DNA of 59,382 bases from Macrostomum lignano (lineage: Eukaryota): assembly GCA_002269645.1 (NCBI GenBank), contig NIVC01000295.1:1-59382 (forward strand), given 5' to 3'. Within the stretch, counting starts at the first letter, position 1; every line of letters begins with the position of its first letter. Below are positions 35,627 through 58,400 of this stretch, in pieces. The position numbers and the translations under genes are program-made. The notes below the pieces were generated by a model. It was not told the DNA's origin, searched no databases, and saw only the letters and a list, made by a program, of their open reading frames with translations.

Positions 35627-38221
<2,595 letters not shown>

Positions 38222-39915: not shown

Positions 39916-42900
39916 TTACGTTACATACATGTCCTGGCTAGAACAAGGCGGCCTGTCTTCTTCTGTTGAGTAATAAACTACAGGATCCTCAATCGCAGCT
40001 GCTGGTCTCGACTCCATTTTGAGTGCTTCAGCTGCCGCGTTGCTGCTTGCAGCTTTGCTTTGTCTGTTATGACGACATTTTTTGCAGTTACTCGCGGCTA
40101 CACTGAGCAATGTTAAGATCAGAGCCAGACTGACAATCGCGATCACAACCCATTGGACCAGAAACACCGGCATTCTCCACCAAGGAACGAGTCTGGCGCC
40201 TGCATTCAGATTTAATTAACATGCGATGTAATATTGTGGTAAGGCTCTCCTATTACTAATAAGCAAATAATAATTAATAGCTTCTTTAATCACTGCAAAC
40301 CTATGCGCAAATGCGCATTATTAATCTGCGATTAGAACCAATCTTTGTACATTGAGTTTTTTTAATGCACTGGAAATTATAATATTTAAAATACCGCGTA
40401 AATACAAGTATATATAACAAAGCTTCAATTTTCCTTTGAAGTGCATTAAAGCGAGCTAAAATGTCAATCGTATGAAGCTTCCAGTTTTAATTGCATGCAT
40501 ACAGCCCCATCCAAAAGATGAGATATTGACATTTGCATATGCTAAAAATGAGTTGTCTGTATGTATGTATCCAGGAGTATGCGATCGATTTTAGAAAAAA
40601 CTTGCACCATTTGATCAGAAGTTTAGTGCTAAAAGTAAAAAAGAAGTCTAACACCAATTATTTTTAAACGAAATTGGGCCTTCAAATAAATTTTGGTAAG
40701 TTCAAATAAAAGAGGTTGCATCCTCAGGCAACTGAACTCAAAGACTCACCGAACTTCGATTTTTGCGGCAGGTTCAGCTGTACAGTCAAGCTTCCATTTA
40801 GCTTTCGGCACTCGATAACTGATCCTGCTATGTCCGTTACGGGATGAACCACAACGGAGAAGTGTGACGTCACAGAACTGAGACACTGAGGGCCCACTGG
40901 ATCGGAAACTACCTGAAATTTAAAGAGTTGCTATTGCAGCTGGTGATATTTTTGACAAGGAGAACTTTCCAAGTTATCACAATTTGCGTACCAATTGTAT
41001 TAGCTGAGCAGCAATATTTGTGCTGTTGGTTGTCCTCAGCTTGCACCGGTGTCTCACTCTGGCACAAGCGGACGTGGACACAACACGGAACTGAGCTAAC
41101 CCGGTACGAAGCCACAACTCAGGCTTTAGCAGGTCGATGCTCAAAGACTCCGGATCCACTGCAAGTACAATATGAGTTTTAAATAAATGGGAAAACTACT
41201 GACCCGTATAGTCAATGAGGAGGTTCAGTTGAACTTTACACTGAAAACTATCAAGATTCTGAACACTATCAGATTCATTGCGTGCATATTGCGACTAGGG
41301 GTTTCAACCTCTTGGGCGTGAATTATACAAGCTCTTGGTCTAACTTCATTCAAGCATGCATTCATTATCGCTCCGCTACGATTCTAAGACTCATCAGAGA
41401 CGGACGTCTATAATACTCGTAGATAGTAAATCTTTTAATCATTTGAACGCTTACTTTGAGGCAAGTAAAGCGACTTTTTTAACTTGCTCAGACCGCCCGC
41501 TGAAAACTCGCAGGTGATACTACGAACGCACTGGTGGTCGAGTCTGCTGTAACGAAACTCAAAGGTAACCATGGTGCCGTTCCGTTGCCAATTTTCCTGG
41601 AATGATCAATCGTAACTTGCTTTTCAGACTTTATATTCTCATACAGTATTCTCCTCTTAAAAATATCTGGTCCCACGCAAGTACGAGTATTAGAAGATAA
41701 TTACCGATTGGAGATAAACTTGGATGAAACGGTTTCTACATTCCTTGTACAATCGGCAAGTTGCTGATGTGTCTTTTGCAGCAGTTTGCAAAGCAACTTT
41801 AAACACTGAAGCGGACTTCTTGGACCATTGGTCTGCATCCCATATCACTTCGCTTGTCCCTGTGGGACAAACAGATAAAGACAACTGTAAAAAATGTAAC
41901 TTCAAAACTATTTTTGAAAAGCGTATATGCTTACAGTTCATCAAAGGCAAGTTACGTGACACAATGTTTCCATTCAATAGGTGGCACTCGATAACTGAAC
42001 CATTGATGTCTGAGGGCTTAACGTTCACTGAGAATAGCGAACTTACTGGACTAGTGCAGGCATGTGCACCTTTTGTTTGTTGTTCTACCTAAAGTTTCAT
42101 CGTCATAATTAAATGCATAAAAATTGAACAACGGCCAAAAACTTATAAATCAGCGAAGCATACCGAAGCTGCTAATAGAGCCGCGACAATCGAGCTATTA
42201 CGACTAGATATTGACAGTTCGCATTTTCTCGGAACGGAGCAGCGACTTTCCGCTAATGTTCGAAATTGGACCGAGCCCTTCAATGGCCACTGGTCAGGCT
42301 GTAGTAGCTCAATCTGCAGTGAATCTGAATATGCACTTTTTAATAACTCAAATTAGAGTATGGTTCAGTGGAACTTCGTGTAAATATGAAAGTTGTTAAC
42401 TCGATCGGTATGAATAATCGAGATTACAAAAATCTTTTTGTATTTTATTTTCACTATCGTTTGTTACAAAGAAAAAGCTCGTTACGTTGCTAACACAGTG
42501 AAATGACTGTGACGATACCTTCCAGGCTGTGTTGTTTCTCCTGATGAGTTTTTTCCCAAACGACAGCCGCCAGCGCAATCATAGAGATTCGTAACATATT
42601 TGGATGCGGCTGGGAGCACTACTGTTGAATTTTTGATCGGATTCAACACCACCACAAGCTAAATGTGTTGAAAGCCCTGTACATCAAACAGTTAAAGCCT
42701 ACCCGAAATGTACAACTGACAGAAAAGGGGCTAGTACTATTCTTAGAATTTTTAGACCATTCTACGGCTACTTAAACCTGTTTTAAAACTCTTGGCCCGT
42801 ACTTTCATTTTATTACCGTCCCATTACAGAATGCTGTCACATGACGATGCTGCAAGTTACAGCGAAACATGTTGGGAATACAAATAAAATATTTTCGTCA

Positions 42901-44991
42901 TAATATCAATTTTATAGGATGCAAATCTTTGCAATAATCTTCTTGTTTTTAGCATTTCTTAAGCAAAGTAGCATTCCTAAAATTTAAAGTGAATTGAAGT
43001 ATCAATTTGCCCCATTAAATTTGGCACTCGTTCATTCGTAAAATTCTGCGCACTAACCAAAACCATTCTGCTTAACCTACAGCGCTGGCGGTTAGCAGCC
43101 CCCATTTTTGCAAACCAAGCTTTTGCTGATGGAAAAAAACGTTACAAAATGGTAGAAAACTTACCAATAGAAGAACTGTCTTCAACGCAGAATTGAAACT
43201 GAAACCCGGGCCTCACGACATATTCATCTGTTTTCAACGCAAGTGTCACGTTATTTGATGTTGGCCGTGACCCTTAAAAGGGCCGTTTTAGTCCCAAAAT
43301 AAGTTGAAGTCAATTCTTGTAAAGCGGATTTTGTAGCGGAGCACTTGGCGATAAAGGCAGGAACTGCCGTAGTTGTCTTTATTGTTAATATCAGTATTAA
43401 GTTTGGTTGTTACTGGCAATAAACAGGCTATAGCTTTCTGGGCACTGGCGGCTGCAACAATGGGTTGAATATAATTTGGATATGAAGTCAAGTGGCAGGC
43501 GAATGACACAATGGCGACGTGACGTGAGCAGTGGCTATGAGCACAGTGAAGGCAGTGAAACGTAGTGGCGAGTTTGGCGTCGGTCGTGGCGTGAAACAGT
43601 CAAGTAAGTGTGTGAGCAGGCTGGCCCAGACAGAAGGGCCGTGGTGAGAAATAAGGAGGCTCGAGGCAGCCAGACAAACAGATAAGACAGCTAAGAGGCA
43701 GCAGGGAAGGAAACAAGGAACAAGCGGAGAGCCGCCGCTAGGCGGGGGGGGGGGTTTAATAAAAGAGCGCAGAGGGGGGTAGCGCGAGCACGAGTGATTT
43801 CATTGGCTGGCGAGAGAACTTAAAATTATCGATCGTGCCAATTTTATACGGTCGCGAGAGAGGATAGCAAAATATACAGTGAATTAGAAATTGCCACAAA
43901 ATCGTTGGGCACTACTACAAGTAAACGTCGCAATAAACGAATGGAAAAGTTTAGTTGAAACGGTGAAACTGAAGGGTTGAATGACTATGGAAAACAGCAG
44001 TCCAACGGCCCTTTTCGGGACCACCTTAAACTGACAACTGAAATTCAGCACATTGTTGGCGACCTTGTCATGTTTTCCGGTTAAATTCAATAGTGAAGCG
44101 GAACCAATATCAGACACCAAACCTTTGTATATCTGCAATATGTCGTTGCCGGCCTCTAAATGAAACGAATTAAAATAAATTCGAACAATTTGAAACTCCT
44201 CGGCATGAATACTCCAAGCCTTGATCAGCTGATTGGTGTAGTTTCTTGAACCGAATTCCGGATGACTCGTTCGTATTCCCCAGATTTCTCTGATAATTTC
44301 TACGGGTATATCTGTCCAATTGTTTGGTAGGAAAAATATTTGGGTTGTATAATTGTCATGAAAAAAATAAAAATTTTTTTTATTTACTTCTTTCTGTTAT
44401 CAATCCCTGCAAACGAACATTGAACGGAGCGGAAGATTCATAATGAAACCGGAAACCCGATTTCCACTTGTCACCTTTGATAGAACATCTCAGCAGAGCT
44501 GGTGCGGACACCCAGTATTCCGACAGTGAATAAGCATTTCTTAAAATTTGAAAATTTTCTACCGGACTAAATAATTTTTTTATATTTCCATACACGTGAA
44601 CAGTGCGACAGACGATGTCAACCGTAGAAAATGAGATTTTTATCGATAAGCCGGCACCTGGATTTAAAAGCCAGCAGTGATCGAAGCTGTTTGCTAGCTT
44701 TGCATTGTAGTCGATTGCAGCAGGACTAAGTGTGACGCTTCCGTGCATTTCAGTTAAATTAGACGGTGCTCTGCAGTTTCCTGGGGTTTTAGCTGAAAGT
44801 TTGAAAGCATTTTTGGATGTTTAAAAATCGACGAAATGGCGGAGTGCGCGCCTCTCATTGCCGATAGGTTAACGTCGGCAACAGCGCTTCGTTTGGATCA
44901 CTGTAATAAAAAACTCACCCGCTAGTAACTTGATTCCATGGTTTATAACAAAAAGAAGGCAGACAGCCTTCAGGTTCGCTGTTAGCAACAT
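39916..44991 (-). CDS. Type I membrane protein A: signal-like exon, CUBx2, repeated Cys module x2, TM, short Tyr-containing tail (contains lesions; possibly a pseudogene)
   Basis: Exons: 44991-44919, 44792-44388, 44311-~44045, 43272-43165, 42658-42402, 42324-42164, 42088-41935, 41859-41705, 41655-41494, 41258-41204, 41158-40992, 40912-40750, 40199-39916. CUB text: SHPEFGSRNYTNQLIKAWSI..FNSFHLEAGNDILQIYKG..VTLALKTD..PGFQF. TM: VFLVQWVVIAIVSLALILTLLSVAA. Lesions: in-frame TGA in the 42.6-kb exon and an interrupted CUB2. Confidence 0.65.
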
Positions 44992-45571
44992 TTTGGTTAA
45001 GAGCTAATAATTGCCTTTGTGGTGCGCGAACGGTTTCTGAGATAGCTTTGAATTTTAAGATAGATTGAACTCTTTTATTCACTTGATATAAACAAACGCT
45101 TAATACAGTTCCACAATCATCTGCGATCTCTTTTCCACTGAAAAGTTATCTTTGGATTAAGTCGATGTTAAAATTGACTGTCAGAGTTAACAGCGTGTGA
45201 AGCAGTATAGTCGATAACATGGCTCACTTATTGTAAACAGGTCTCTTTCTGGGTCACATCTGGAATTTTTAGTGCCCAATCGTGTTTAATTTTATACTGA
45301 AGGCAAGTTGGTTTATTGGTTGTCTTGAGTACTTTTCAAAACAATATTTGCGGACAGTATTTAAAATACGCTATGAGGTATTTTTATACTCGTAGCACAT
45401 TATTATGATGAGTAAATTTATATCTCAGCATCCAACTGTGGAAAAGCATGTCTAAATTTAGTGATTTTTGTAAAAAAAATGGCATAGTTTCCATCAGTAA
45501 TAGTATACGCCTATTCTTGATAAGCATGGTTATTCAATATTAGAGGCAGGAGCTTTAGGAACTTTAGCCGC

Positions 45572-45830
45572 ATTGTCACACAAACGGCGACAGGCATTAT
45601 TGTCCATTCCGCCGACTCCCCTGAGCAGACACACAAGCGCGCGGATACGTACGCAGTCATACGCACAGGCACACACTCACACAAGGTGTACAGTGGCGCT
45701 AATTTTATTTATCGTTAGGCATGTACACTTCACTGTGCCTTGGGGGTTGGCCCTCAAGAGCATTAATTGCACGAGCAGAGCTAAGCCGAGATGATCCAAA
45801 GTAATGTGACTGCATTTGGAATCGAGCCTA
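45572..45830 (+). mobile_element. Dispersed repeat, copy 2 (inverted relative to 20195-20460)
   Basis: Direct alignment; GCCGC occurs on both flanks (possible 5-bp TSD). Confidence 0.72.
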
Positions 45831-47599
45831 GGCCGCTAACAAAAAAGAGCGCTGCACCGCCCTGTATGCTCAGGATATCTACTAGATCTAGGTTTAAATC
45901 AGAATGAATATGCTTTTTTCATCTTAAATGAAGGCTGACTAAAAGGTTTGAGTCTCCGTCGGTGTTAGAGTATTATCAACATGTTAACCCTGTCATCATT
46001 TTGGCCTGAAAGCTTGTAGCCTAAAAAATCACTTATAAATTTATTGTAACTTTGATCGAAACAATAGTTTTTTTTTAAAATCTAAGTCTGTTTCAAGATG
46101 TTGTGGGTGTGATAGGCCTCTTGGCTCTCTGTTAATAATTATACTGCTGTTACCAAATTGTTGTAGGGGTCGGGGTTTATTAACTTTATTCTGTTGCTGA
46201 TACTAGATTATTACAGGGGATTTCGGGGGGTTCTTTAGAATTTAGGGAGAAAATATGCAAATATCACTACTAGAAGGAGTATGCTTTAAAGTTACTCCTG
46301 GCAGCGTGAGTGTCCGAGCGGCAAGACACTGTCTATATAAACTAATCCGAATAGGGCTACGCAATGGATTAGAGTTTCCTGGGAAACGCACTAATGGGGA
46401 ATTTCAATATTTAATAGGGAATGCTGACATTAGGTAAGGGATGGGCCTAATGGGGAAGGAGTATAGGGGAAGAGGATTTGTCTAAATTTTAAAAACTTGG
46501 GATAAGTCGCTAGGAGCGCGCAGGGACTGGGCGGCCTTTGCGTTAGGGGAAGGGGAAGGGGAGGCTTGAATGCACACACAACTGGGGGAGAGGGGTCGAG
46601 GGGAGCACAGTTCTTTCAACTAGGGGGGAGGGGAAGTGTTCGCTGGGAGGGGAGAAGCGGTCGGCGCTTCAAGGGAATAGAGGGGTTATTTATTGGGGAA
46701 AGAAAGGAAGACTGAAAGCTGAATCACTTCTATTTTTAGAACAAACTGTTCATACTCCAGACTCAGCTAGGAGCAATCGCCAGAAGAGCATGCAAGAAGA
46801 AGAAGTTTATTTGCGCGTATATATACTAATTTTACTAAATATGGCGGACAATTTTAAACAAAAATACGTAAAAGAATTTATTAGCAGAAAAGTTACAGTA
46901 TAAAATCAGTTATTTATTTACGTATACTTACTTCTGATAATGCTAAAATTAATAATGACAGGAAAAATGAATTTACGTAAAAAACGAGAAAAGCTAATGT
47001 ATTAAGTCAACTTGGTTACTAGTAAAGCAAAAATGAACGACAAAATATCAAGGCTTAAAAAACAGAGTTTATAAAAATAGCGCTGGCACATGAGCATGCG
47101 AGTTAATTCGATAATTTTATTTTGAGTTAGTATTTATTTTTAGGTAAAATTATTGCGCGTGAAAAGCGGAATAGAAACAAAAGCCAATAACAACATCATC
47201 AAAGGAATATCAAAGGAATAATAACAAAAAAATTAAACCTTTACCGCATATCTATATTTACGTAAAGTATACTTTTGACGGTCCAACTAGCTGTCTAAAT
47301 ATTGTATTTTATAATAAAAACGTAGCTTACCACTTAATGTTATTTGTGACGAAATAATCGTTGCGCGTAAAATTTCTTCTCAGTAGTGCAATCTACCTGA
47401 TTTGGGACCTTATTGAAATAATCAGTGCGTATTGATCACTTTAATTTCCAATCATGCAGTAATTGATGTCACCCGGAATATAATTATGCAATTACTCTAC
47501 ACACTCTACACAAAATCTGAATTTCACAGGAGAACTTTAATTCTCTTTAAATGGCAGTCTCACATGGCCTCACGAAAACGTACACTTCATTTTGCGATA

Positions 47600-47910
47600 G
47601 CAGTTACGACGGATAAATGAAACCATGGACAATTCTAAATAACTTTTGCAAGCCGAGTTTGCCCCACAGGGATTTTTGACAGTCTTTGAGTATATGGCCA
47701 GTTGCAGGTCCAAAGACTGCGTCGTAACTTTACCAGGCTTGTCATTTGTGTTGTTAATCGTGACAAGTTTTTTTCCCAAGCGACAGCCCAGACCAATTAT
47801 AGGGATTTGGAAGGCACTGGCAGTTTCCACACTCCTAATCCATATTTGAATGGCTGTTAGTGGCAAAAAGTTTTAATGGCATCTTTCTTATTATCGGTAG
47901 CTAAAATAGT
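47600..47910 (-). pseudogene. Orphan exon remnant homologous to the receptor A exon at 42658-42402
   Basis: Shared DNA block AATC.CTAT.ATTG..CTG..GGCTGTCG.TTGGGAAAAAA.CT..AACAACACA; the frame is broken. Confidence 0.55.
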
Positions 47911-48060
47911 TTTCCATAGTATTTTTACAAAACAACAAATACATTCTGTAATTGTAGGTGAAGGTTTTAATTAGGTTAGGATTTCGACCAGCCGTTTAAG
48001 CAACATAGATTTCCCTGTCCTCTATCTAGAATGATAATGATTGATTAGTTACTTTGTGAG

Positions 48061-51000
48061 CTATGTAAATCCTGTGTTTGAGAAAATAATTGTAAAAATT
48101 AATTGCACATAACTTACACAATCTTGTTCACCGTAATCTTGATTGCAAACAGCAACAGAGGCAGATGTAGCTAGCTGCTGCATCACGAGTTCAGTTGACG
48201 GATTTTGCTGACCTCTGCTCATTTTGACGAGTTTCGAGCAAAAAAAGAAAGCTGCAACCAGGACAGAAACGACAGTTGCTACTGCTAAACCAATCAGTGC
48301 CGGTCGCTCCCACACTGTAGCGAGCCTGCCATCTGCAGTTATATTAATTTTAGCTACAAGCATTTTGCCTGTGTTGCTGCAGACATTTCAGTAATTCATT
48401 CGGCTTTATTTACAATCATCATTAGTTGGTCGAAGGGTCGCTTTCACGAGGTCAAAATTTTTCATGGTAGATTTTTTCACGTTTTTACGTCTCAAGCTCG
48501 TAGAAGTGACTCGCAATACTTTTTACGATTTCAAAATTAGAGTTTATGAAGTTTTGACTTCATGAAAGTGATCGAACTTTCTGATTTCGACAACATAAAA
48601 TATCGAGCTTATGAAAGTCCACAAGTTCATGTGTTTAGATTCAGAACCGCACTGAAGCCATGATAATGAATCCAACCTGTTTGCGATAATTAAGTAATTA
48701 AAACTCACCTAAATTTAGCGGCGACAGCTTTAGCACAAAAGAATCGTTGACTAGCTTACAGATAATAACTGATCCTGCCAAAGCTGATGGCTGAGTGATC
48801 GCTACAAACTGTGACTTTATTGTACTGAAGCAACGAGGACCTTTTGGATTTGCTATAGTCTATAATAGAAGCACGTTTATGTAAACTAAAGTTTTAAAAG
48901 TAAAGCGAAATTTGAATATCTACATAATATGCCAGCACAAACCATTTTCGTTCGACGGGCAGTGATGATTGCGGCACCGACAGTCTTTACTCTGCACCGG
49001 TGTCGTACATTAGCACAGGTAGATTCAGAAACTACTTTGAATTGAAGCATTCCGGACAGAGGCCACAGATCAGGCTTTAGTAACTCAATTTTTACGGACT
49101 CTGGATCAACTTCAGTGATTTCAGTAGCGTTTATTAGTATAGTTTGATTTTGAGTGTGACAACAAGGATACATTCTGATCTTTAAAGCGGATCACCATAA
49201 TAGAAGCATCCTAGCTAAGATATATAAACCTCTGTCCTATTTTTTTGCCATTGGTCCTTGCGGCTAGCATTCTGTCATTGCTTTTTAATAGTACATGGAA
49301 TATTGTACCAAATATTATTCGTGTTGATGCATTTCATATGTTACACAGTTAATATAATAATATCGAAATTTCAATCCAACATGAATTAAATCAACAGAGT
49401 TCCTGCAATCCTAAAAGTTAAAATAAATTGGGAAACTAAAGAAGTTGATGAATATTCCTGAATATCTATGAATATTTATTTCGCTTGCCATCGGTTCCTT
49501 TTCTGAAAATATTTCTGGAAATTTTTTTCTTGAAAAATTATGCAAGATAACAACACATGATATACTATAAATACTAACTTAATTTTGCACTCAAATCTAT
49601 TATAGCTTGTTACAATGAAACTTGTGCAAAATTAAGAATTGTCGTTGGAATACAATGAAAGCAACTTACCAGCAGGAAGCGGATGGGAGATGATTAATTT
49701 CGACAGTCCAGAAGCAGAAAACTGGCAGGTGACATTTTTGAAGCAGGCGATCATTTTCGAACCAGTTTTGCGAAAATGGAAAGCAGTCTTGAATAAATTC
49801 GAAGTGTTCGAATTAATCACCTGAAAAGTCGAATTTTAGCATGAAAAAGTGCATGTTTATGAAAACTTTTTTTCGAAATATCAATTATCGGAGTGCTGGA
49901 GTGTTGCATCTTTCAATATATATCATAAATATATAAAGTTCTATCAATATTCAGGATTATAAATGCTTTACCTTTAGTACTATGTGAAAGAATTATCAAG
50001 GGAAATATTTATATTGCTAGCAATTCTTAAAAATTTGTAAGCAAGCTCGAAAACAACACTAATAAGTTTAACTAGACGTGATACAATAAAGTTGCTGTGT
50101 AGTAGTATTTTAGAAAACTATATTCCTAATTTATTTACAAGCTATTTATAAAAAATATGTCAGGGACTACTCGAACATGTTTCGAACTCAAAAACATGTT
50201 TGAGTAGTCCCTGAAATATGTATTTTCGTGATACGCTCGTAAATTCATGTTCGAACATCGGGATTGCTCAAATGGCTGTTGCTGCTGCCTTTACCTTGAT
50301 CGATCAAGGTAAAAAATTATATACGCTAATATACTACTGCAAAGCAGCTGCATAATCTTCTATCCGTTGGCTTGTTTAAGGTAACGCCTTCTGTAAATGT
50401 ACGCATGTAATTAAAACTCATTCGTTTTCATCTAGTTAAAAACTCTTAAGACTTCTGCTACACAACGCGGTTATCCCTGGTATAGTACATGTATGTGCTG
50501 CACACCTTTACTAAATAAGGTCCCAGTTCGAAGCTGGAACTGTTGCATTCGCTCCACAAATTACACCTTGCTTGTACGGAGAAGTTAATTGCTGGGTATA
50601 GCGAAACACTGAATTCTAGACCAAAGTGATTAGACTGGTCAGAAAAGTGCCATCCAACTTCGTAAGCCCCTATAAAAAATAAAGAGGAATTTTATGCAAC
50701 ATTAATCGTATTTAAACCCTGCTGAAGGTAAAGCTGTACGTACATTTCGTTGACCGAAGCGCTGTCGATTCGTAACCGCCGTTCCGCAATTGGCACATGA
50801 TTGTTGAGCCTGCCCAGACCGTGGGATGGGCAGCCACAGCAAATACCGACGTCACTGAGCTGAGGCACTGAGTACCAGCTGACTCTTTTGCAGACTAAAA
50901 CAATTAGAGAATCGAGGCTTTCATTAAAACCTGGCGTTATTAATAGCAAAAACGAGTTTCACTGACAAGGCTGAATTTCGTAGCAGTGTACTTCATTCCA

Positions 51001-53609
51001 CTGGAGGTCTTTAGACTGCACCGGTGCCTAATGCGCGAACAGGCCGGCTCAGACACAGCACGAAAATGAACGACTCCCGTTAGGGGCCACAGCTCTGGTT
51101 GCAGTGCTCAATATGTACTGATGTTGGGTCGGCTGAAAAATAGAATTGCACTTGTGTAATTGAAAGTTCCACTCAGTGGTGATTAGGGTATTCATATTTC
51201 TAACGGTGAAATTATTCATGGTAAACTAATTTATTTGAAATGTTATTTTTACCTATACATTACCACATATTGTGAAATAAAATGCTTAGTTGATAAGATA
51301 ACAAACTTCTTACGGACGGGCGGGGTGATTGTCGTATCGCCAGGTAGTCCAGAAAATTGGCAATTTATAGTAGCGATGCATAATACGGCCAAATTCTGAT
51401 GCATATCAATCAATGTGTGAATTAATTTAAAGTCATGAGAATGGTGCGCTTGCTGAAATAATCAAGAAAACACTCTACCAACTGAATAAGTATATTAGCA
51501 ATTTTTTAAAATGAACATAATTGTTTTATAACTAACGTGCGCGACGACCACACTTTGATTGCAAACTGGGTGCAAATGCACTTTCTAATGTGGCCCATGT
51601 CACTGTGCCAAATTGAAAAATATCGATGAGCCGTTTCGTCAGTATGGAGATAAAATAAAGTCGACACTTCGCTGTTTCTGCAAGCTGCAAAAACAAACTT
51701 TAATTGAACCAGCTTAAGCAGATTTTCGATTGTTTTTAGCAATAAATTTACTTTCCTTACAAGAACTGGAAGGTCAGAAACACAGAATTGAATTTGAATC
51801 CGGATTTGACCCTGAACCGTCCGTTCGGAACACAAGAGTCACACTGCCAGTGAATGTTGTCTGTACTCCATTGTGGTCACCACCCGTTAGGTTAAACAGA
51901 GACATATTACCAATGCTTGGTACGACGCCCTGAAATACTTGCAGCATGTCATATCCTTTTTCAGTACGGAATGAGGCGAAATTTATCCAGACCGATTGTA
52001 AGTTCTTGGCCTGAATGCTCCAAGCTACTCTCAAATTGTTCGAATACTTTTGCGCTCGAAAGTCGGGATGACTGTATCGTTCTCCACTAATAGCTTTTAT
52101 CATTTCTGTGGCAGGATCTGCATTTTATATGGACATACATGTATTAGAATAGTTGCAGTAAATGACGATTTTTAGCGATTTTTCAGTGTTACTTTTGTTT
52201 ACATCACATTAAATAATTGCTATAGGGCAGATAGCTAGTTAAATGTGATTTTACCCTAACTGTAGTAGTGCAGGCTTGGGATTTGTTAGGGGTTATGATA
52301 GACAAGGGAGTTTGGGAGTTTTTTTACCAGTATAGAGCAGTTGGGCTCTAGAAAAGGAAGTCATGTAGCTCATCTCGGGACTTAGAAAAACAGAAGCAAC
52401 TGGAGCTTAGGGTCAGCTAAGATTAAGCGAGTTAAGACCAGGGAATTAGGGATTGGGAATACATAAAACTACTATCAGTAGTTTTCGCTAGTAACAGCAC
52501 ACTATGGTAGTCATTATGTTGCACTCGGGAACTAATAATGCCTTGCAACTAATTGCATATCACTTTTCTAATTATAATCTTTCGAATTATAATAACAATT
52601 ATGGATTCCTGTCTTAATTATTTAGTCTTACATAATGAGAATTAAGAACAGCAGAGAACCTGGCTGGTGGCAGCAAATACCAATTCAAGCCAGTATCCAC
52701 TAAGAACCAAAACGAGTAAAATAACAAGTAGCCTAGACCGGGCAAGCCACGGCGAAGTTTTCTTTTGTGCCGATAAGTTTATACAAATGTAGTTGACTAG
52801 ACAGGGAGGGAATGATTATCCAAATTTCGGTGGCACTTGTCAATAAAATTATACACGGATTCGATGTGAAAGTGAAAACTTCAAGGACAGATGAGTATAA
52901 TCAAATTTGAACTTTCTGAAAATACAGCACTATGAAGAGCTATATTATGTCAATATAAATATTTCCATAGATTTTCCCACAAAACAAAAAACGAATGCAT
53001 TCAGCAACTAAGACTGCGTAAAAAACTTACTGACATAATAACTGTCTCCCATAAAACTTGCACCAAACGTGGCCCTGTGCTTGTATCGAAAACTGAAACC
53101 CACGTTCCATCCCACGCCGTTGCTTTTGCATCGTAGTAGAACAGGGCCAGCGAGCCAGAACTCTGAGAGAGACGATTTTCCAGACGACAAACGGAACCTC
53201 TCTGTAGCATTACTTGGCGATTCCGATCTTTCGTACAAGTGAACTGTGCGGCAAATGCTCAAATATATAAAAAGGGTGAACTGTATCTCAACTGCATTGT
53301 TAGTGCTGAGCAGCCAACAGTGATCAACATTGACACTAGGTCCTCGGTAGTTACATTCGAGGAATTAGCCTGGACAATACCTTCTGGTTCGCTTAGAATT
53401 GTATTTATTGAGCATGAAGCTGGTTTTTCGTGTGAAAAGTAGATTAAGTAAAATAGGTAGAATATTAAATTTACGTAGAAAATTTTAAATGGTTGCACAC
53501 CTGTTTATTTCTTGTTTTATAGAGCTTGTGAGAAGAACTTACCTCCAAAACTATCAGTGCTTAGTAGTAAAACCAAAAAAATTTTCCAATCCAGTTGTAA
53601 CCGTACCAT
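48061..53609 (-). CDS. Type I membrane protein B, paralog of A (CUBx2, Cys module x2, TM); several frameshifts as assembled
   Basis: Exons: 53609-53543 (MVRLQLDWKIFLVLLLSTDSFG), 53419-53031, 52117-~51748, ~51685-?, ~51153-50970, ~50888-50720, ~50667-50505, 49820-49670, 49109-48943, ~48869-48709, 48332-~48061. CUB2: SHPDFRAQKYSNNLRVAWSI..FRTEKGYDMLQVFQG..VTLVFRTDGSG. TM: LIGLAVATVVSVLVAAFFFC. Confidence 0.68.
50160..50214. repeat. Hairpin: 23-bp stem (one G-T pair), 9-nt loop, intronic
   Basis: TCAGGGACTACTCGAACATGTTT-CGAACTCAA-AAACATGTTTGAGTAGTCCCTGA. Confidence 0.88.
50290..50313. repeat. Perfect 24-bp palindrome
   Basis: TTTACCTTGATC|GATCAAGGTAAA. Confidence 0.9.
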
Positions 53610-55482: not shown

Positions 55483-58400
55483 TCAGCATGCACTCTTCCA
55501 AATCGTTGTAGCTGAAGTAGACGCTCCGCCTTCGGTTGAGTGCCTCGACGGCTGTTGTGTCAGTGGTACAGATACAGATGCTGAGGCTAAGCCAACACCG
55601 CTGCTATTCTTCTGTCGTCGACTTCCAAGAAGTCTGCGACCAGCCGCCGCGGAGACCGTTTCTGCATCTTCCTCTTCAGAACTGTCGTCCAAAGCTCTAT
55701 TAGTGAAGCTGAGTCGATGCTGCAATGGAGGTGCCTGAGCTGGGGAAATATCACGTCGGAGATGCACTCCTCGACGAGGGTGCTGCGGCTGTTGCTGCAT
55801 AGTCGAGGGAGGTGGCGGAGGCGGAGGCGGCGGTAGTGCCCTGGCGGGCTGGAAGAATATTGAATCGTCATCTTCCTCCTCAACGCAGACGTCGTATCGA
55901 CCACCATGCGAGCCAGATGCCCAATCATCTTCATCTTCTTCGGCTTCGAAATCGTCTTCCTCTTCGTCGTCCAGATCGATTAGCCGTCGGGCAGGGGGCG
56001 GAGGCGGACTAGGCACCGATGCTATTCGGCACTCCATCGGTTCGCCACCATATTTACTCGCAACCCCTCCTTGCATTCTTAAAATAGTTCTCCTCGTTGC
56101 ACTCGCCGCACTCGTTTTCGTGGATCTGGGCGTGGGTGACGCGACGGACACCTGAGCTAATAAAAGAACTAGGCGGCGATCGTTGACGACTTTGCTGATT
56201 GCGTCGTCGGTTGTGTCGTGGGCGACCAAGGCTCGGATCTGCAGAGGACTCAGGGCGGACCGGCGAGGTTGGCGACTCGGCATGCGATTGTGTGCGGACG
56301 AGCTCGATGTCCGGTGCCGATTGCGGACCATGTTGCGGGCCGATGCTCTGAGTCAGGTAGCGATATGTGACTCGCTTGGGCACGCGTGGACCCAGGTCGC
56401 TGTAGTTTCGAGTTAACGACTTCTTCTGCTGCTTGGACTGACAGTCCTGGAGGATGGAGCGAAGGCCAGCAAGGCCGGAAGATTTTTGGGTCTGTTGCGG
56501 GGTTTGAGACGGCTGCGTATCACTATCGACACTGCCACCGCCCGAGGAGCTGAGAAGAGGGCGCGCACTACTGCTGCTAATATTTCCGCGCCACCACCTC
56601 CATGGTCACCGCCTCCGTTGTCGTCGTCGCCACCTCCACCGCCGCCTTCACTTCCAGCTGCACCACCACCTTCACCGTCATCTTCTCCTTCGTCAGCGTC
56701 ATTCAGGGCGGCAACAGGGACACCTTCGATGCCGCAGAACATAGCTCGCCTGTCCTCCTTGTACATGTCAATGAGAAGCTCGAGCTTTCGTTCAATGTCT
56801 TCCACCTGGTTATCAGAAGATCAAATGTGTTAAACTATTATTTTTCAATTAACTTTGAGTGCTAATCAATCCCAAAAAGTATATTTTCAATCTACTTACG
56901 GATCTCTCTACTTTAACGATTCGTGAAGCTAGGCTGACTTTACTCTCGTAAACATCTTTGTCTTTGCTTCCCTGACGGCCCAGAATTTGGTCGAGCCTGC
57001 GCAGTAGGTCAGTGGTATCTATGTGAAATTTTATTCATTCTTACACTTACATGTACTTAGACCTGCACATTTGAAGTACGCCATGACAATATACAAGCGT
57101 ATAGAACGTGCTAACTTTTGCTACTGCTTTAAAATTAACCTAATTAAATATACGAAAAAAGTGAATACCTGAGTTGGAGCACCTTGATTCTTGCCAGCAT
57201 GTCAACATGCCCCGCCGAGTATTGTTCAATTACATCTTTAACGTCGTAAGGGCGAAGGGCTTCACGAAATTTTCGCCTAGCAACAAAGTATTTTACTTTT
57301 CGAATTACTCGAATGGCATTTTTGTGCATCTCCGTTAGTTTCATCGGCGTTTCTTCGTCTAAAAAGTGAAAGCAAAATGTTTTTAAGGCTTGATTTAAAG
57401 CACGCGCTTTGATTAATGCCAGGAATAAGGGAATTCTTTCTGCTTTGAGAATATTTGTAAATAATTTATTTACCAAAAGCAAAAGCAAGTTTAGTCTCAA
57501 AAAAGCGGAGCTAGCCTATCGGAAATTTGACTTCGTATTTAGCCATTCAATCGTTAAATTAAAAGCCGGTAAATACTGATCGCTTACCATCTTCTTTCTG
57601 AGAAATGGAGGTCAGTGATGGCTGCGGCTCTAGACCACCTCCAGGAGTGTCGGATATTGCCAAAGAGACGTGGCTTCTGCAAAAGACAAAAATGTACACT
57701 TTACTTTACGTTTTTATGTAAAATATGTTTACTTGTGTTTTGCGGAAGACACTTATGTTTTCATGAATACAATCTTTAAATAGCAAATAAAATTGACGTA
57801 TTTAAAATATGAAATTGCGTCCCATACTCGTAGTAAAGAATTGGCCAAAGCGTTAAAATAGGCCCCCATTTGTCAATTCAAAAAGGCTCTTGCTGCAGTC
57901 CAATAAGCGAAGCATAATAATTGCCTAATAGATATTTTGTTAAATATTATCGTTTTGGCATGCTGCTCTCAATTAAAAATTAATACGCTCAAAACACTAG
58001 AAATTTTGTAGCCAAGTTGCACTGCTAGTGATATATCAATTATTAATAATGCTTACGTATAATGATACTGTTAATAAACATATAAGTATTTCAAGTTGAT
58101 AGTTTTATTACTAAGGCGGATATAAAAAATCAGTGGCAGTAGTGAGTGAACACAAGTATTATATGCGTCATTAATAATTGCTGTCGCGCAAAGAGAAATA
58201 ATAAAAACAAACTATAATCTAAGCAAGGAAAAGTTTCCTGTCCCAATTTTTCTGTGATATTTTGCTTTTAGTATGGCTGTAAATATTCTTTTCGTTTTGT
58301 TTCTATCAAAGGGAGTGTTTGTTACTTATATATTTTTGAAAATCTTTGCTCGAGAATTCACCGCCATCGATCACCTAAATGAAGTTGCCAGATCGGCAAA

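What the first reader, a model, noticed from the sequence alone, without database searches (positions are those of the whole stretch)
39916..53609. Tandem pair of unannotated CUB-CUB-(novel Cys module)x2 single-pass receptors next to the lectin cluster
Seen: two paralogous genes with the same exon plan. Each has two copies of a two-exon, ~110-aa module: D(P)xS(L/V)xI(E/D)LL(K/Q)P(E/D)xWxxxGxxxFxxxxxxxCxxxxxxCxL... followed by GxxCxSxVxSxFxVxxxPxxxxGSxIxC. Four copies align (e.g. DPESLSIDLLKPELW, DSLQIELLQPDQW, DPESVKIELLKPDLW, DPTSVHIE.LQPELW). I cannot assign this module to a known family. The tails are short with Tyr motifs (VVYYST, DMYV; DYGE). Inference: a lineage-specific receptor family, possibly a recognition locus together with the secreted lectins.
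Basis: partly seen in the sequence, partly recalled or inferred. Interest (0 to 1): 0.72.

Follow-up and report, generated by a model that had tools for sequence, protein, structure and literature searches.

The report
Flatworm CUB plus Ig-like receptor gene pair
The region holds two neighbouring copies, one intact and one broken by frameshifts, of an uncharacterised cell-surface protein family found so far only in the flatworm Macrostomum; its "novel" cysteine module is predicted to be a very divergent immunoglobulin-like beta-sandwich, so this is a lineage-specific but fairly ordinary receptor family.

Summary
Two same-strand (minus) paralogous genes lie at 39916-44991 (gene 1) and 48061-53609 (gene 2). 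The four copies of the two-exon, four-cysteine module align at about 45% identity.

- Each gene has two further, more divergent two-exon modules. The ectodomain is therefore CUB-CUB plus four modules of about 100 aa, not two.
- Gene 2 has at least three frameshifts (CUB1, CUB2, first 'a' exon) and is probably a pseudogene. Gene 1 gives an intact 782-aa ORF over 13 GT-AG exons.
- The family is already in databases. A profile of the 'a' exon found only Macrostomum lignano hypothetical "CUB domain-containing" proteins. Gene 1 aligns end to end with one of them (E 3e-76, 30% identity). In M. lignano these genes also form tandem arrays, with no lectin-like ORF within 10 kb.

The module matches no Pfam family and no PDB sequence. 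AlphaFold models (pLDDT 85 and 76) are Ig-like beta-sandwiches with weak Foldseek matches (TM 0.45-0.59, E > 1e-3).

Best reading: a type I membrane glycoprotein with a CUB head, an Ig-like stalk and a short tail carrying a conserved terminal tyrosine motif. The lectin "recognition locus" idea has no support. Interest is modest.

The parts
39916..44991 (-). Gene 1: intact 13-exon model, 782 aa. Signal peptide, CUB1, CUB2, four ~100-aa modules, TM, 58-aa tail ending DMYVT*.
   Evidence: All introns are GT-AG and the CDS is 2349 nt without a stop. It is colinear with M. lignano P0001: blastp E 3e-76 over 767 columns.
44919..44991 (-). Gene 1 exon 1: start codon and hydrophobic signal-peptide-like N-terminus.
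   Evidence: read from the sequence
44388..44792 (-). Gene 1 exon 2: CUB1. A divergent CUB that lacks the Glu/Asp/Asp Ca2+-site residues.
   Evidence: No Pfam hit. hhalign against the family CUB2 profile gives 97.3%. Alignment A12.
44036..44311 (-). Gene 1 exon 3: first part of CUB2.
   Evidence: Pfam PF00431, E 1.6e-5, 25.7 bits against a 21.4 cut-off.
43273..44035 (-). 763-nt insertion/intron that splits the CUB2 exon in gene 1 only. The model needs it spliced out, which leaves about 8 extra residues (SWSRPTSN).
   Evidence: Gene 2 and all M. lignano relatives lack it. GT/AG ends are present. Splicing is not verified.
43165..43272 (-). Gene 1 exon 4: end of CUB2.
42401..42770 (-). Gene 1 module M0: exons 42770-42650 and 42540-42401. 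W-type first exon plus a b-like second exon. This is the least certain part of the model.
   Evidence: Splice-chain enumeration. Weak W and b HMM hits.
41935..42324 (-). Gene 1 module M1 (a1 42324-42164, b1 42088-41935).
41455..41859 (-). Gene 1 module M2 (W 41859-41705, X 41596-41455).
40750..41158 (-). Gene 1 module M3 (a2 41158-40992, b2 40912-40750).
39916..40199 (-). Gene 1 last exon: juxtamembrane RLVPWWRMP, TM helix, and a tail with VVYYSTEE and C-terminal DMYVT*.
48061..53609 (-). Gene 2: paralogue with the same layout, but its reading frame is disrupted in the 5' two-thirds. Probable pseudogene.
53031..53419 (-). Gene 2 CUB1 exon. It has a 1-nt frameshift at about 53330-53350, and its length mod 3 differs from gene 1.
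51761..52117 (-). Gene 2 CUB2 exon (uninterrupted). It has a frameshift at about 51805-51820 and an in-frame TGA at 51776-51774.
   Evidence: Pfam CUB E 6.6e-6 on the conceptual translation.
51314..51684 (-). Gene 2 M0' region (W0' ~51684-51537, X0' 51452-51314). The conserved frames cannot be joined with consistent phases.
50744..51132 (-). Gene 2 module M1' (a1' 51132-50967, with a frameshift at about 51100-51110; b1' 50894-50744).
48061..50669 (-). Gene 2 intact 3' part with consistent phases: W2' 50669-50512, X2' 49820-49670, a2' 49109-48943, b2' 48859-48709, TM/tail 48332-48061. The tail runs 13 aa past the family's terminal Y-V-x motif.

Best explanation
The region holds two head-to-tail members of a Macrostomum-restricted family of type I membrane glycoproteins.

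Architecture, shown for gene 1 and for the M. lignano relatives:
- signal peptide
- CUB1 and CUB2
- four two-exon modules of about 100 aa, each with four Cys, in two alternating subtypes ('W+X' and 'a+b')
- a conserved juxtamembrane motif RLxxVWE(R/L)P
- one TM helix
- a short cytoplasmic tail with conserved Tyr motifs, including a terminal (V/M)-Y-(V/L)-(T/N)

The number of (WX+ab) double modules varies from 1 to 3 across the family. Both module types are predicted to be Ig-like beta-sandwiches.

Inferred mechanism (not shown):
- The CUB pair is the ligand-binding head.
- CUB2 keeps the Tyr/Glu/Asp/Asp set that forms the Ca2+ site of ligand-binding CUB domains such as those of C1s and cubilin.
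- The Ig-like modules form a glycosylated stalk; gene 1 carries 15 N-x-S/T sequons overall.
- The tail Tyr motifs couple to sorting or phosphotyrosine signalling.

Status of the two copies:
- Gene 1 is a potentially functional copy. This depends on an insertion in its CUB2 exon being spliced out.
- Gene 2 is a decaying copy.
For: Gene 1 model:
- 13 GT-AG exons and an open 2349-nt CDS.
- End-to-end blastp match to M. lignano P0001, E 3e-76.

Family membership and range:
- The exhaustive 'a'-exon profile search hit 11 proteins. The true relatives among them are all M. lignano.
- M. lignano genes have the same two-exon module plan and sit in same-strand tandem arrays.

Domains:
- CUB2 passes Pfam.
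- CUB1 is related to CUB2 by hhalign at 97.3%.
- The E/D/D and Y columns are conserved in CUB2 alignment A13.
- AF2 'ab' module: pLDDT 84.8, pTM 0.77. Best Foldseek matches are Ig constant-type domains, TMq 0.45-0.59.
- AF2 'WX' module: pLDDT 75.7. It matches generic Ig/arrestin-like sandwiches.
- The tail and juxtamembrane motifs are conserved.

Constraint and decay:
- dN/dS between M. lignano paralogues P0001 and P0012 is 0.37 overall and 0.2-0.3 in most domains, which indicates constraint.
- Gene 2 frame breaks.
Against: - No transcript, expression or functional data exist for any family member (literature searches empty).
- Splicing of gene 1, especially the 763-nt interruption of CUB2 and the M0 exons, is unverified.
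- CUB1 of both window genes has lost the Ca2+-site residues.
- The structure models rest on shallow alignments (9-11 rows). Foldseek E-values are all above 1e-3.
- Homology between the 'ab' and 'WX' modules is only weakly supported (hhalign 21%).
- Disulfide connectivity could not be read, because no coordinates were returned.
- The gene 2 frameshifts could in principle be assembly errors.
Confidence: 0.6

Rival explanations
1. One reading: the two receptors and the neighbouring secreted lectin-like genes form one functional recognition (immune or allorecognition) locus.
For: - Physical proximity: three F5_F8_type_C_2-like lectin genes at about 17-38 kb, with gene 1 ending about 2 kb from the last one.
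- The family is lineage-restricted, tandemly duplicated and divergent (about 30-45% between paralogues). This is typical of recognition genes.
Against: - In five M. lignano loci the family arrays have no lectin-like ORF within +-10 kb.
- The lectin genes are on the opposite strand.
- dN/dS of 0.2-0.4 between close M. lignano paralogues shows purifying rather than diversifying selection.
- There are no polymorphism or expression data.
Confidence: 0.07
2. Neither window copy is functional: the locus is a pair of decaying duplicates of a family whose working members lie elsewhere.
For: - Gene 2 has at least 3 frameshifts and a phase mismatch.
- Gene 1 has a unique 763-nt interruption of the CUB2 exon and an aberrant M0 module.
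- Both have a CUB1 without the Ca2+-site residues.
- Neither product is in a 15-billion-protein collection.
Against: - Gene 1 keeps an open frame through 13 exons with canonical splice sites.
- Gene 1 keeps the invariant Cys of the 'a+b' and W/X modules and the family's juxtamembrane and C-terminal motifs.
- This is unlikely for a long-dead gene.
Confidence: 0.2
3. The gene 2 frameshifts are assembly indel errors, and both genes are intact functional paralogues.
For: - The 3' half of gene 2 (six exons) is intact with consistent phases.
- Conserved coding signal persists on both sides of each shift, so the changes are recent or artefactual.
- The CUB2 shift lies next to short GGG/AAA runs.
Against: - Two of the three shifts are not in homopolymers.
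- Gene 1 shows no shift across 2.3 kb of CDS in the same assembly.
- Gene 2 also has a phase mismatch at W0'/X0' and a read-through of the family's terminal motif.
Confidence: 0.2
4. The four-Cys modules are ZP-N/ZP-C-like domains. On this reading the proteins are CUZD1-like CUB-ZP proteins, with an egg-coat, gamete-recognition or polymerising matrix role.
For: - The CUB-CUB...TM layout resembles CUZD1 (from general knowledge).
- Each (WX+ab) double module has 8 Cys.
- One betaglycan ZP-C hit appeared at rank 11 in Foldseek.
Against: - No Pfam Zona_pellucida hit, even at E<=10.
- That Foldseek hit has an rmsd of 12.5 A.
- The Cys spacing (7/27/24 residues; C-x5-6-C pairs in W and X) is unlike ZP-N.
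- There is no furin-type site or external hydrophobic patch between the last module and the TM.
Confidence: 0.04

Closest known systems
Macrostomum lignano hypothetical proteins annotated 'CUB domain-containing protein' (BOX15_Mlig014562g1 = P0001; BOX15_Mlig000815g2 = P0012; PAA86983.1/PAA86082.1; PAA48879.1/PAA75150.1)
   Same: - Same architecture from signal peptide to terminal YVT motif.
- Same two-exon module plan.
- Same tandem same-strand arrangement.
- Gene 1 aligns end to end (E 3e-76).
   Different: - Only about 24-30% identity over the full length (37-49% in the last module), so the window genes are a separate, unannotated subfamily or come from another species.
- The window CUB1 has lost the Ca2+-site residues.
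- The number of CUBs (2-4) and of double modules (1-3) varies in M. lignano.
Single-pass CUB-domain receptors (neuropilins, Neto, CDCP1, C. elegans SOL-1/LEV-10) - comparison from general knowledge
   Same: Type I membrane proteins with N-terminal CUB domains as the presumed ligand-binding or auxiliary-subunit head and a short tail.
   Different: - None combines CUB-CUB with a run of these four-Cys Ig-like modules.
- No sequence similarity was detected outside the CUB domains (Pfam and PDB sequence searches).
CUZD1 / DMBT1-type CUB + zona pellucida proteins - comparison from general knowledge
   Same: Two CUB domains followed by Cys-rich Ig-like domains and a C-terminal TM.
   Different: No ZP profile match, a different Cys pattern, and no cleavage site or hydrophobic patches.
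Immunoglobulin-like beta-sandwich domains (best structural matches: IgA/IgM Fc constant domains, light-chain CL, TCR C, Rst D1-D2; for the WX type: PD-1, CRIg, arrestin-N lobes)
   Same: Predicted 7-8-strand sandwich of about 100 aa. The 'ab' model also has short helices at the A-B and E-F positions, as constant-type domains do.
   Different: - TM only 0.45-0.59 and Foldseek E > 1e-3.
- No Pfam Ig/FN3 hit.
- hhalign against a C1-set alignment gives 0.1-0.25%.
- Four Cys instead of the canonical B-F pair.
- The invariant Trp is not in strand C.

Membership tests
Macrostomum CUB-CUB-(WX/ab)n-TM family (P0001-like) | Colinear full-length similarity to an annotated member | tested here: met
   blastp of the gene 1 model against P0001: residues 49-782 vs 41-759, E 3e-76. 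Gene 2 exons match P0001 by tblastn.
Macrostomum CUB-CUB-(WX/ab)n-TM family (P0001-like) | 'a' exon signature D-P-x-S-x-x-I-x-L-(L/I)-x-P-x-x-W...G...F...C......C-x-L | tested here: met
   The profile of the window 'a' exons retrieves the family at E 1.5e-31 to 1.7e-9. Reciprocal hits occur in loci L001-L005.
Macrostomum CUB-CUB-(WX/ab)n-TM family (P0001-like) | Juxtamembrane RLxxVWE(R/L)P and C-terminal (V/M)Y(V/L)(T/N) | tested here: met
   Gene 1 has RLVPWWRMP and DMYVT*. Gene 2 has RLATVWERP, but its SYVQ motif reads on for 13 aa.
Macrostomum CUB-CUB-(WX/ab)n-TM family (P0001-like) | Two exons per module; same-strand tandem arrays | tested here: met
   Exon HSPs of P0001 in L001. Arrays of 2-3 genes in L001, L002 and L005.
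CUB domain (PF00431) | Pfam HMM above the gathering score | tested here: met
   CUB2 scores 25.7 bits (gene 1) and 26.8 bits (gene 2) against a cut-off of 21.4. CUB1 gets no direct hit, but hhalign CUB1 vs CUB2 gives 97.3%, E 2.8e-11, and CUB1 of relatives P0018/P0001 hits Pfam.
CUB domain (PF00431) | Ca2+-site Tyr/Glu/Asp/Asp of ligand-binding CUBs (from knowledge of C1s/cubilin CUBs) | tested here: inconclusive
   Judged by alignment inspection only. The residues are present in CUB2 of both genes and most relatives (A13). They are absent from CUB1 of both window genes and present in CUB1 of the M. lignano relatives (A12).
Immunoglobulin superfamily domains (I-set, C2-set, C1-set, V-set) and FN3 | Match to a family sequence profile | tested here: not met
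   No Pfam hit at E<=10 for any module or at E<=1 in the whole proteins. No PDB sequence hit.
Immunoglobulin superfamily domains (I-set, C2-set, C1-set, V-set) and FN3 | Beta-sandwich fold of about 100 residues | tested here: met
   AF2 models with pLDDT 84.8 and 75.7. The top Foldseek hits are mostly Ig or Ig-like sandwich domains, TMq 0.45-0.59 (ab) and 0.34-0.57 (WX), with E 1.4e-3 at best. These are predictions, not solved structures.
Immunoglobulin superfamily domains (I-set, C2-set, C1-set, V-set) and FN3 | Canonical strand B-strand F disulfide with Trp in strand C | tested here: inconclusive
   There is a Cys in predicted strand F and one just after strand B. Two extra Cys are present, and the invariant Trp lies in the A-B region. 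No coordinates were available to measure the pairs.
Zona pellucida module / CUZD1-like | ZP profile match, the ZP-N Cys pattern, and a cleavage site plus hydrophobic patch before the TM | tested here: not met
   No PF00100 hit. The Cys spacing differs. No R-x-x-R lies between the last module and the TM. Only one poor ZP-C Foldseek hit was found.

The most novel reading that the evidence does not exclude
The 'a+b' module could be a genuine invertebrate relative of constant-type (C1-like) Ig domains, with A-B and E-F helices. In that case the tandem arrays would be a fast-evolving self/non-self or mate-recognition system of free-living flatworms, possibly working with the adjacent lectins.
Probability: 0.05. 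Interest if true: 0.7.

Novelty: new variant of a known kind. Interest (0 to 1): 0.3.

Why it matters
It defines a so-far undescribed domain family: a four-Cys, two-exon, Ig-like module in two subtypes. It also defines a receptor architecture, CUB-CUB-(Ig-like)2-6-TM, that appears confined to Macrostomum, a flatworm model for regeneration and for sexual selection.

The practical uses are limited:
- better annotation, since two unannotated loci (one a pseudogene) and a Pfam-less domain are identified;
- a candidate surface-receptor family that can be tested by in situ hybridisation and RNAi in M. lignano.

It does not bear on a long-standing open question, and lineage-specific expansions of CUB/Ig-type receptors are common in invertebrates.

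Tried and rejected
- The word-indexed homologue search failed twice: with the spliced gene 1 protein and with the module alignment. Relatives do exist, so the word prefilter missed 30%-identity relatives.
I therefore used an alignment of exact single-exon translations (A3), which worked.
- Exact look-up of ten window ORFs in the protein collection found nothing.
- Two of the 11 exhaustive hits (P0003, P0011) are internally repetitive proteins matched in many short stretches. I set them aside as spurious.
- Alignments of the (WX+ab) double module for AF2 failed. MAFFT kept placing the W/X exon fragments onto the a/b half, so I folded the two module types separately.
- The ZP-module, FN3 and C1-set membership ideas were tested and not supported.
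- A 63-nt match between 42528-42589 and 47747-47807 was considered as a relic exon. It lies mostly in an intron of gene 1, so it was left as an unexplained small repeat.
- Species identity could not be settled. Two window repeat families match M. lignano contigs at 70-85%, about the same as the two window copies match each other. This fits M. lignano itself or a close relative.

Full report
**What is there**

The window is eukaryotic DNA with short introns, microsatellites and transposon fragments. Stop-to-stop translation of the minus strand between 39.8 and 53.8 kb shows two sets of similar short coding blocks. I assembled them by hand from the sequence and by enumerating splice chains.

Gene 1 (39916-44991, minus strand):
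- The model has 13 exons, and every intron is GT-AG.
- The CDS is an open 2349 nt encoding 782 aa.
- The layout is a hydrophobic N-terminus, CUB1, CUB2 and four modules of about 100 aa, each encoded by two exons, followed by a TM helix and a 58-aa tail.
- Fifteen N-x-S/T sequons lie upstream of the TM helix.

Gene 2 (48061-53609, minus strand) has the same layout, but see below.

**Check of the observation**

Leave-one-out profiles score the left-out exon at 37-76 bits. That is E 1e-4 to 1e-16 even for a database of 1.84e9 proteins, so the repeat is far beyond chance. Six-frame HMM scans find no further copies in the window.

I call its exons W and X.
- In gene 1, W is 41859-41705 and X is 41596-41455.
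- In gene 2, W is 50669-50512 and X is 49820-49670.
- A further, degenerate copy (M0) follows CUB2 in each gene.
- The exon phases of b1, W, X, a2, b2 and the TM exon are mutually consistent in both genes.

The ectodomain is therefore CUB-CUB plus four modules, alternating WX and ab.
- MAFFT spontaneously aligns W with 'a' and X with 'b'.
- The second exon of gene 1's M0 is b-like.
- Profile-profile support for WX/ab homology is weak: hhalign 21%, E 1e-3.

**CUB domains**

CUB2 of both genes passes the Pfam CUB threshold. CUB1 does not hit Pfam. However, a family CUB1 profile matches the family CUB2 profile at 97.3% probability, E 2.8e-11, over 106 columns. CUB1 of the M. lignano relatives also hits Pfam CUB. 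'CUB-CUB' is therefore correct.

By alignment inspection:
- CUB2 keeps the Tyr/Glu/Asp/Asp positions that form the Ca2+ site of ligand-binding CUBs. The role of these positions is taken from knowledge of C1s/cubilin-type CUBs.
- CUB1 of both window genes has lost them, while CUB1 of the M. lignano relatives keeps them.

**Gene 2 is broken**

tblastn of gene 1 and of P0001 against gene 2, plus three-frame translation of each exon, shows the conserved sequence jumping frame at three places:
- in CUB1, at about 53330-53350;
- in CUB2, at about 51805-51820, with TGA at 51776-51774 in the incoming frame;

In addition:
- the W0'/X0' exons cannot be joined with consistent phases;
- exon lengths mod 3 differ from gene 1 exactly at these exons;
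- the tail reads 13 aa past the family's terminal motif.

The six 3' exons are intact. Two of the three shifts are not in homopolymer runs, and gene 1 has none in 2.3 kb of CDS. I therefore favour a real, fairly recent pseudogene over assembly error, but I cannot exclude error.

Gene 1 has its own oddity. A 763-nt interruption of the CUB2 exon (44035-43273) is absent from gene 2 and from all relatives. It has GT/AG ends and, if spliced, leaves about 8 extra residues.

**Relatives**

- The word-indexed search found nothing with the spliced protein or with the module profile.
- The exhaustive search accepts only exact window translations, so I used an alignment of the four 'a' exons (A3).
- It returned 11 proteins at E <= 1e-3, eight of them at E <= 1e-10.
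- Nine are true relatives. Two are repetitive proteins matched in many short stretches, which I discount.
- All nine relatives, and their cluster mates, are Macrostomum lignano hypothetical proteins, annotated mostly 'CUB domain-containing protein'.
- P0001 (759 aa) has exactly the gene 1 layout, and gene 1 aligns to it end to end: 29.6% identity, E 3e-76.
- P0012 has three (WX+ab) double modules. P0010/P0016 and P0004/P0018 have one, and P0016 carries additional CUB-like segments.
- The juxtamembrane motif RLxxVWE(R/L)P is conserved, as are tail motifs. These include a terminal (V/M)Y(V/L)(T/N): gene 1 DMYVT*, P0001 GVYVT*, P0010 EVYLN*.

In the M. lignano assembly GCA_002269645.1:
- the genes have the same two-exon-per-module plan;
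- they sit in same-strand arrays of two or three;
- no ORF resembling the window's lectin-like domains lies within +-10 kb.

Two interspersed repeats of the window match these contigs at 70-85% identity. This is similar to the 85.5% between the two window copies. The window therefore comes from M. lignano or a close relative. In either case the gene 1/2 subfamily is not in the protein collections. Literature searches found nothing on these genes.

**What the module is**

No module hits Pfam at E <= 10 or PDB sequences.

The 'ab' module:
- AlphaFold2 was run on P0001 residues 568-674, with an 11-row alignment of M. lignano modules and window exons (A5).
- It gave pLDDT 84.8 and pTM 0.77. The model is a sandwich of strands A, B, C, C'/D, E, F and G, with short helices after A and after E.
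- Foldseek against the PDB found no hit at E <= 1e-3.
- Of the 50 best hits listed, most are immunoglobulin constant-type domains (IgA and IgM Fc, CL, TCR C) and other Ig domains, at TMq 0.45-0.59. The top-ranked hit, poplar GalS1, is not one of them.

The WX module:
- AlphaFold2 on P0001 residues 466-569 (alignment A9) gave pLDDT 75.7 and a seven-strand sandwich.
- It matched PD-1, CRIg and arrestin-N-type sandwiches at TMq 0.34-0.57.

Conclusion: this is a new sequence family with a known (Ig-like) fold, and membership of any named Ig set or of FN3 is not shown. A ZP-module reading fails on profile, Cys spacing and the absence of a cleavage site.

**How it probably works**

Shown: the architecture of a type I membrane glycoprotein, and family-wide conservation of CUB2, the module cysteines, the juxtamembrane motif and the tail tyrosines. 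dN/dS of 0.37 overall, and 0.2-0.3 in most domains, between M. lignano paralogues P0001 and P0012 indicates constraint.

Inferred: the CUB pair binds a ligand, with CUB2 probably Ca2+-dependent. The four Ig-like modules act as a stalk or adhesion surface. The tail tyrosines mediate sorting or phosphotyrosine signalling. The ligand and the tissue are unknown.

**Verdict**

The family is a lineage-restricted receptor family with a Pfam-less module, but the module is Ig-like, relatives are already deposited as hypothetical proteins, and the link to the lectins has no support.

Novelty: a new variant of a known kind. Interest: modest (0.3).

Noticed in passing
window 41860-41934 (minus strand): The 75-nt intron between exons b1 and W of gene 1 is a multiple of three and has no stop in frame. 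The ORF 42088-41693 therefore reads straight through, and intron retention would insert 25 aa without breaking the protein.
   Followed up: partly
window 42528-42589 and 47747-47807: A 63-nt stretch is shared at 79% identity between an intron/exon edge of gene 1 (upstream of the M0 second exon) and the spacer downstream of gene 2. It occurs nowhere else in the window. Its nature is unknown (small repeat or relic).
   Followed up: partly
window 20194-20457, 45561-45855 (inverted copies) and 21860-22121: Interspersed repeats. The two ~260-300-bp copies of the first family are 85.5% identical to each other and match Macrostomum lignano contigs (L001-L003, L005) at 70-85%. A second repeat matches L004 at 73%. 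This is the main clue to the source organism.
   Followed up: partly
window ~17070-19000, ~26430-29100, ~36960-37880 (+ strand): Three tandem copies of a lectin-like gene. Each has two jelly-roll-type domain exons; the second hits PF22633 F5_F8_type_C_2 at E 3e-7 to 3e-5. The two exons are separated by a (GACA/TCTG)n-type microsatellite and are followed by a long low-complexity [17 protein letters not shown]-type repeat.
   Followed up: partly
window 33946-34371 (+): An ORF with a clear WSC (carbohydrate-binding) domain, Pfam PF01822, E 1.7e-16. It lies between the second and third lectin-like genes.
   Followed up: no
window ~29240-33100 (minus strand) and 24195-24857: Fragments of an LTR-retrotransposon-type element: several separate ORFs whose translations look, by eye, like protease, reverse-transcriptase/RNase H and integrase pieces, in a stretch of 51-55% G+C. 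There is a further reverse-transcriptase-like ORF at 24.2-24.9 kb. They were not analysed further or reassembled.
   Followed up: no
window ~7400-12800: Very long microsatellite/low-complexity arrays with extreme GC and AT skew. One mechanical ORF of 767 aa reads LSIYLSIY... throughout.
   Followed up: no
window 3719-4669 (+), 5330-5728 (+), 55483-57500 (-): Flanking conserved genes: a poly-Q-rich exon with an RPEL repeat (myocardin/MRTF-like, PF02755, E 3.8e-13), and C-terminal exons of a KCNQ-type potassium channel (PF03520, E 2.1e-25).
   Followed up: no
L001 20825-22600; L002 480-900, 9480-13864 and 23389-23859; L005 650-2610, 10001-15606 and 20250-24355: In M. lignano a P0001-type gene is followed by a P0010/P0016-type gene in at least three contigs. 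The order of subfamilies within the arrays therefore looks conserved between duplicated genome regions.
   Followed up: partly
P0001 vs P0012 (L001/L003): Module M1 (ab) is identical at synonymous sites between the two M. lignano paralogues, although flanking domains have dS of about 0.1-0.3. Module M0 (WX) has dN/dS of 0.82. This may reflect local gene conversion and uneven constraint; the counts are small.
   Followed up: no
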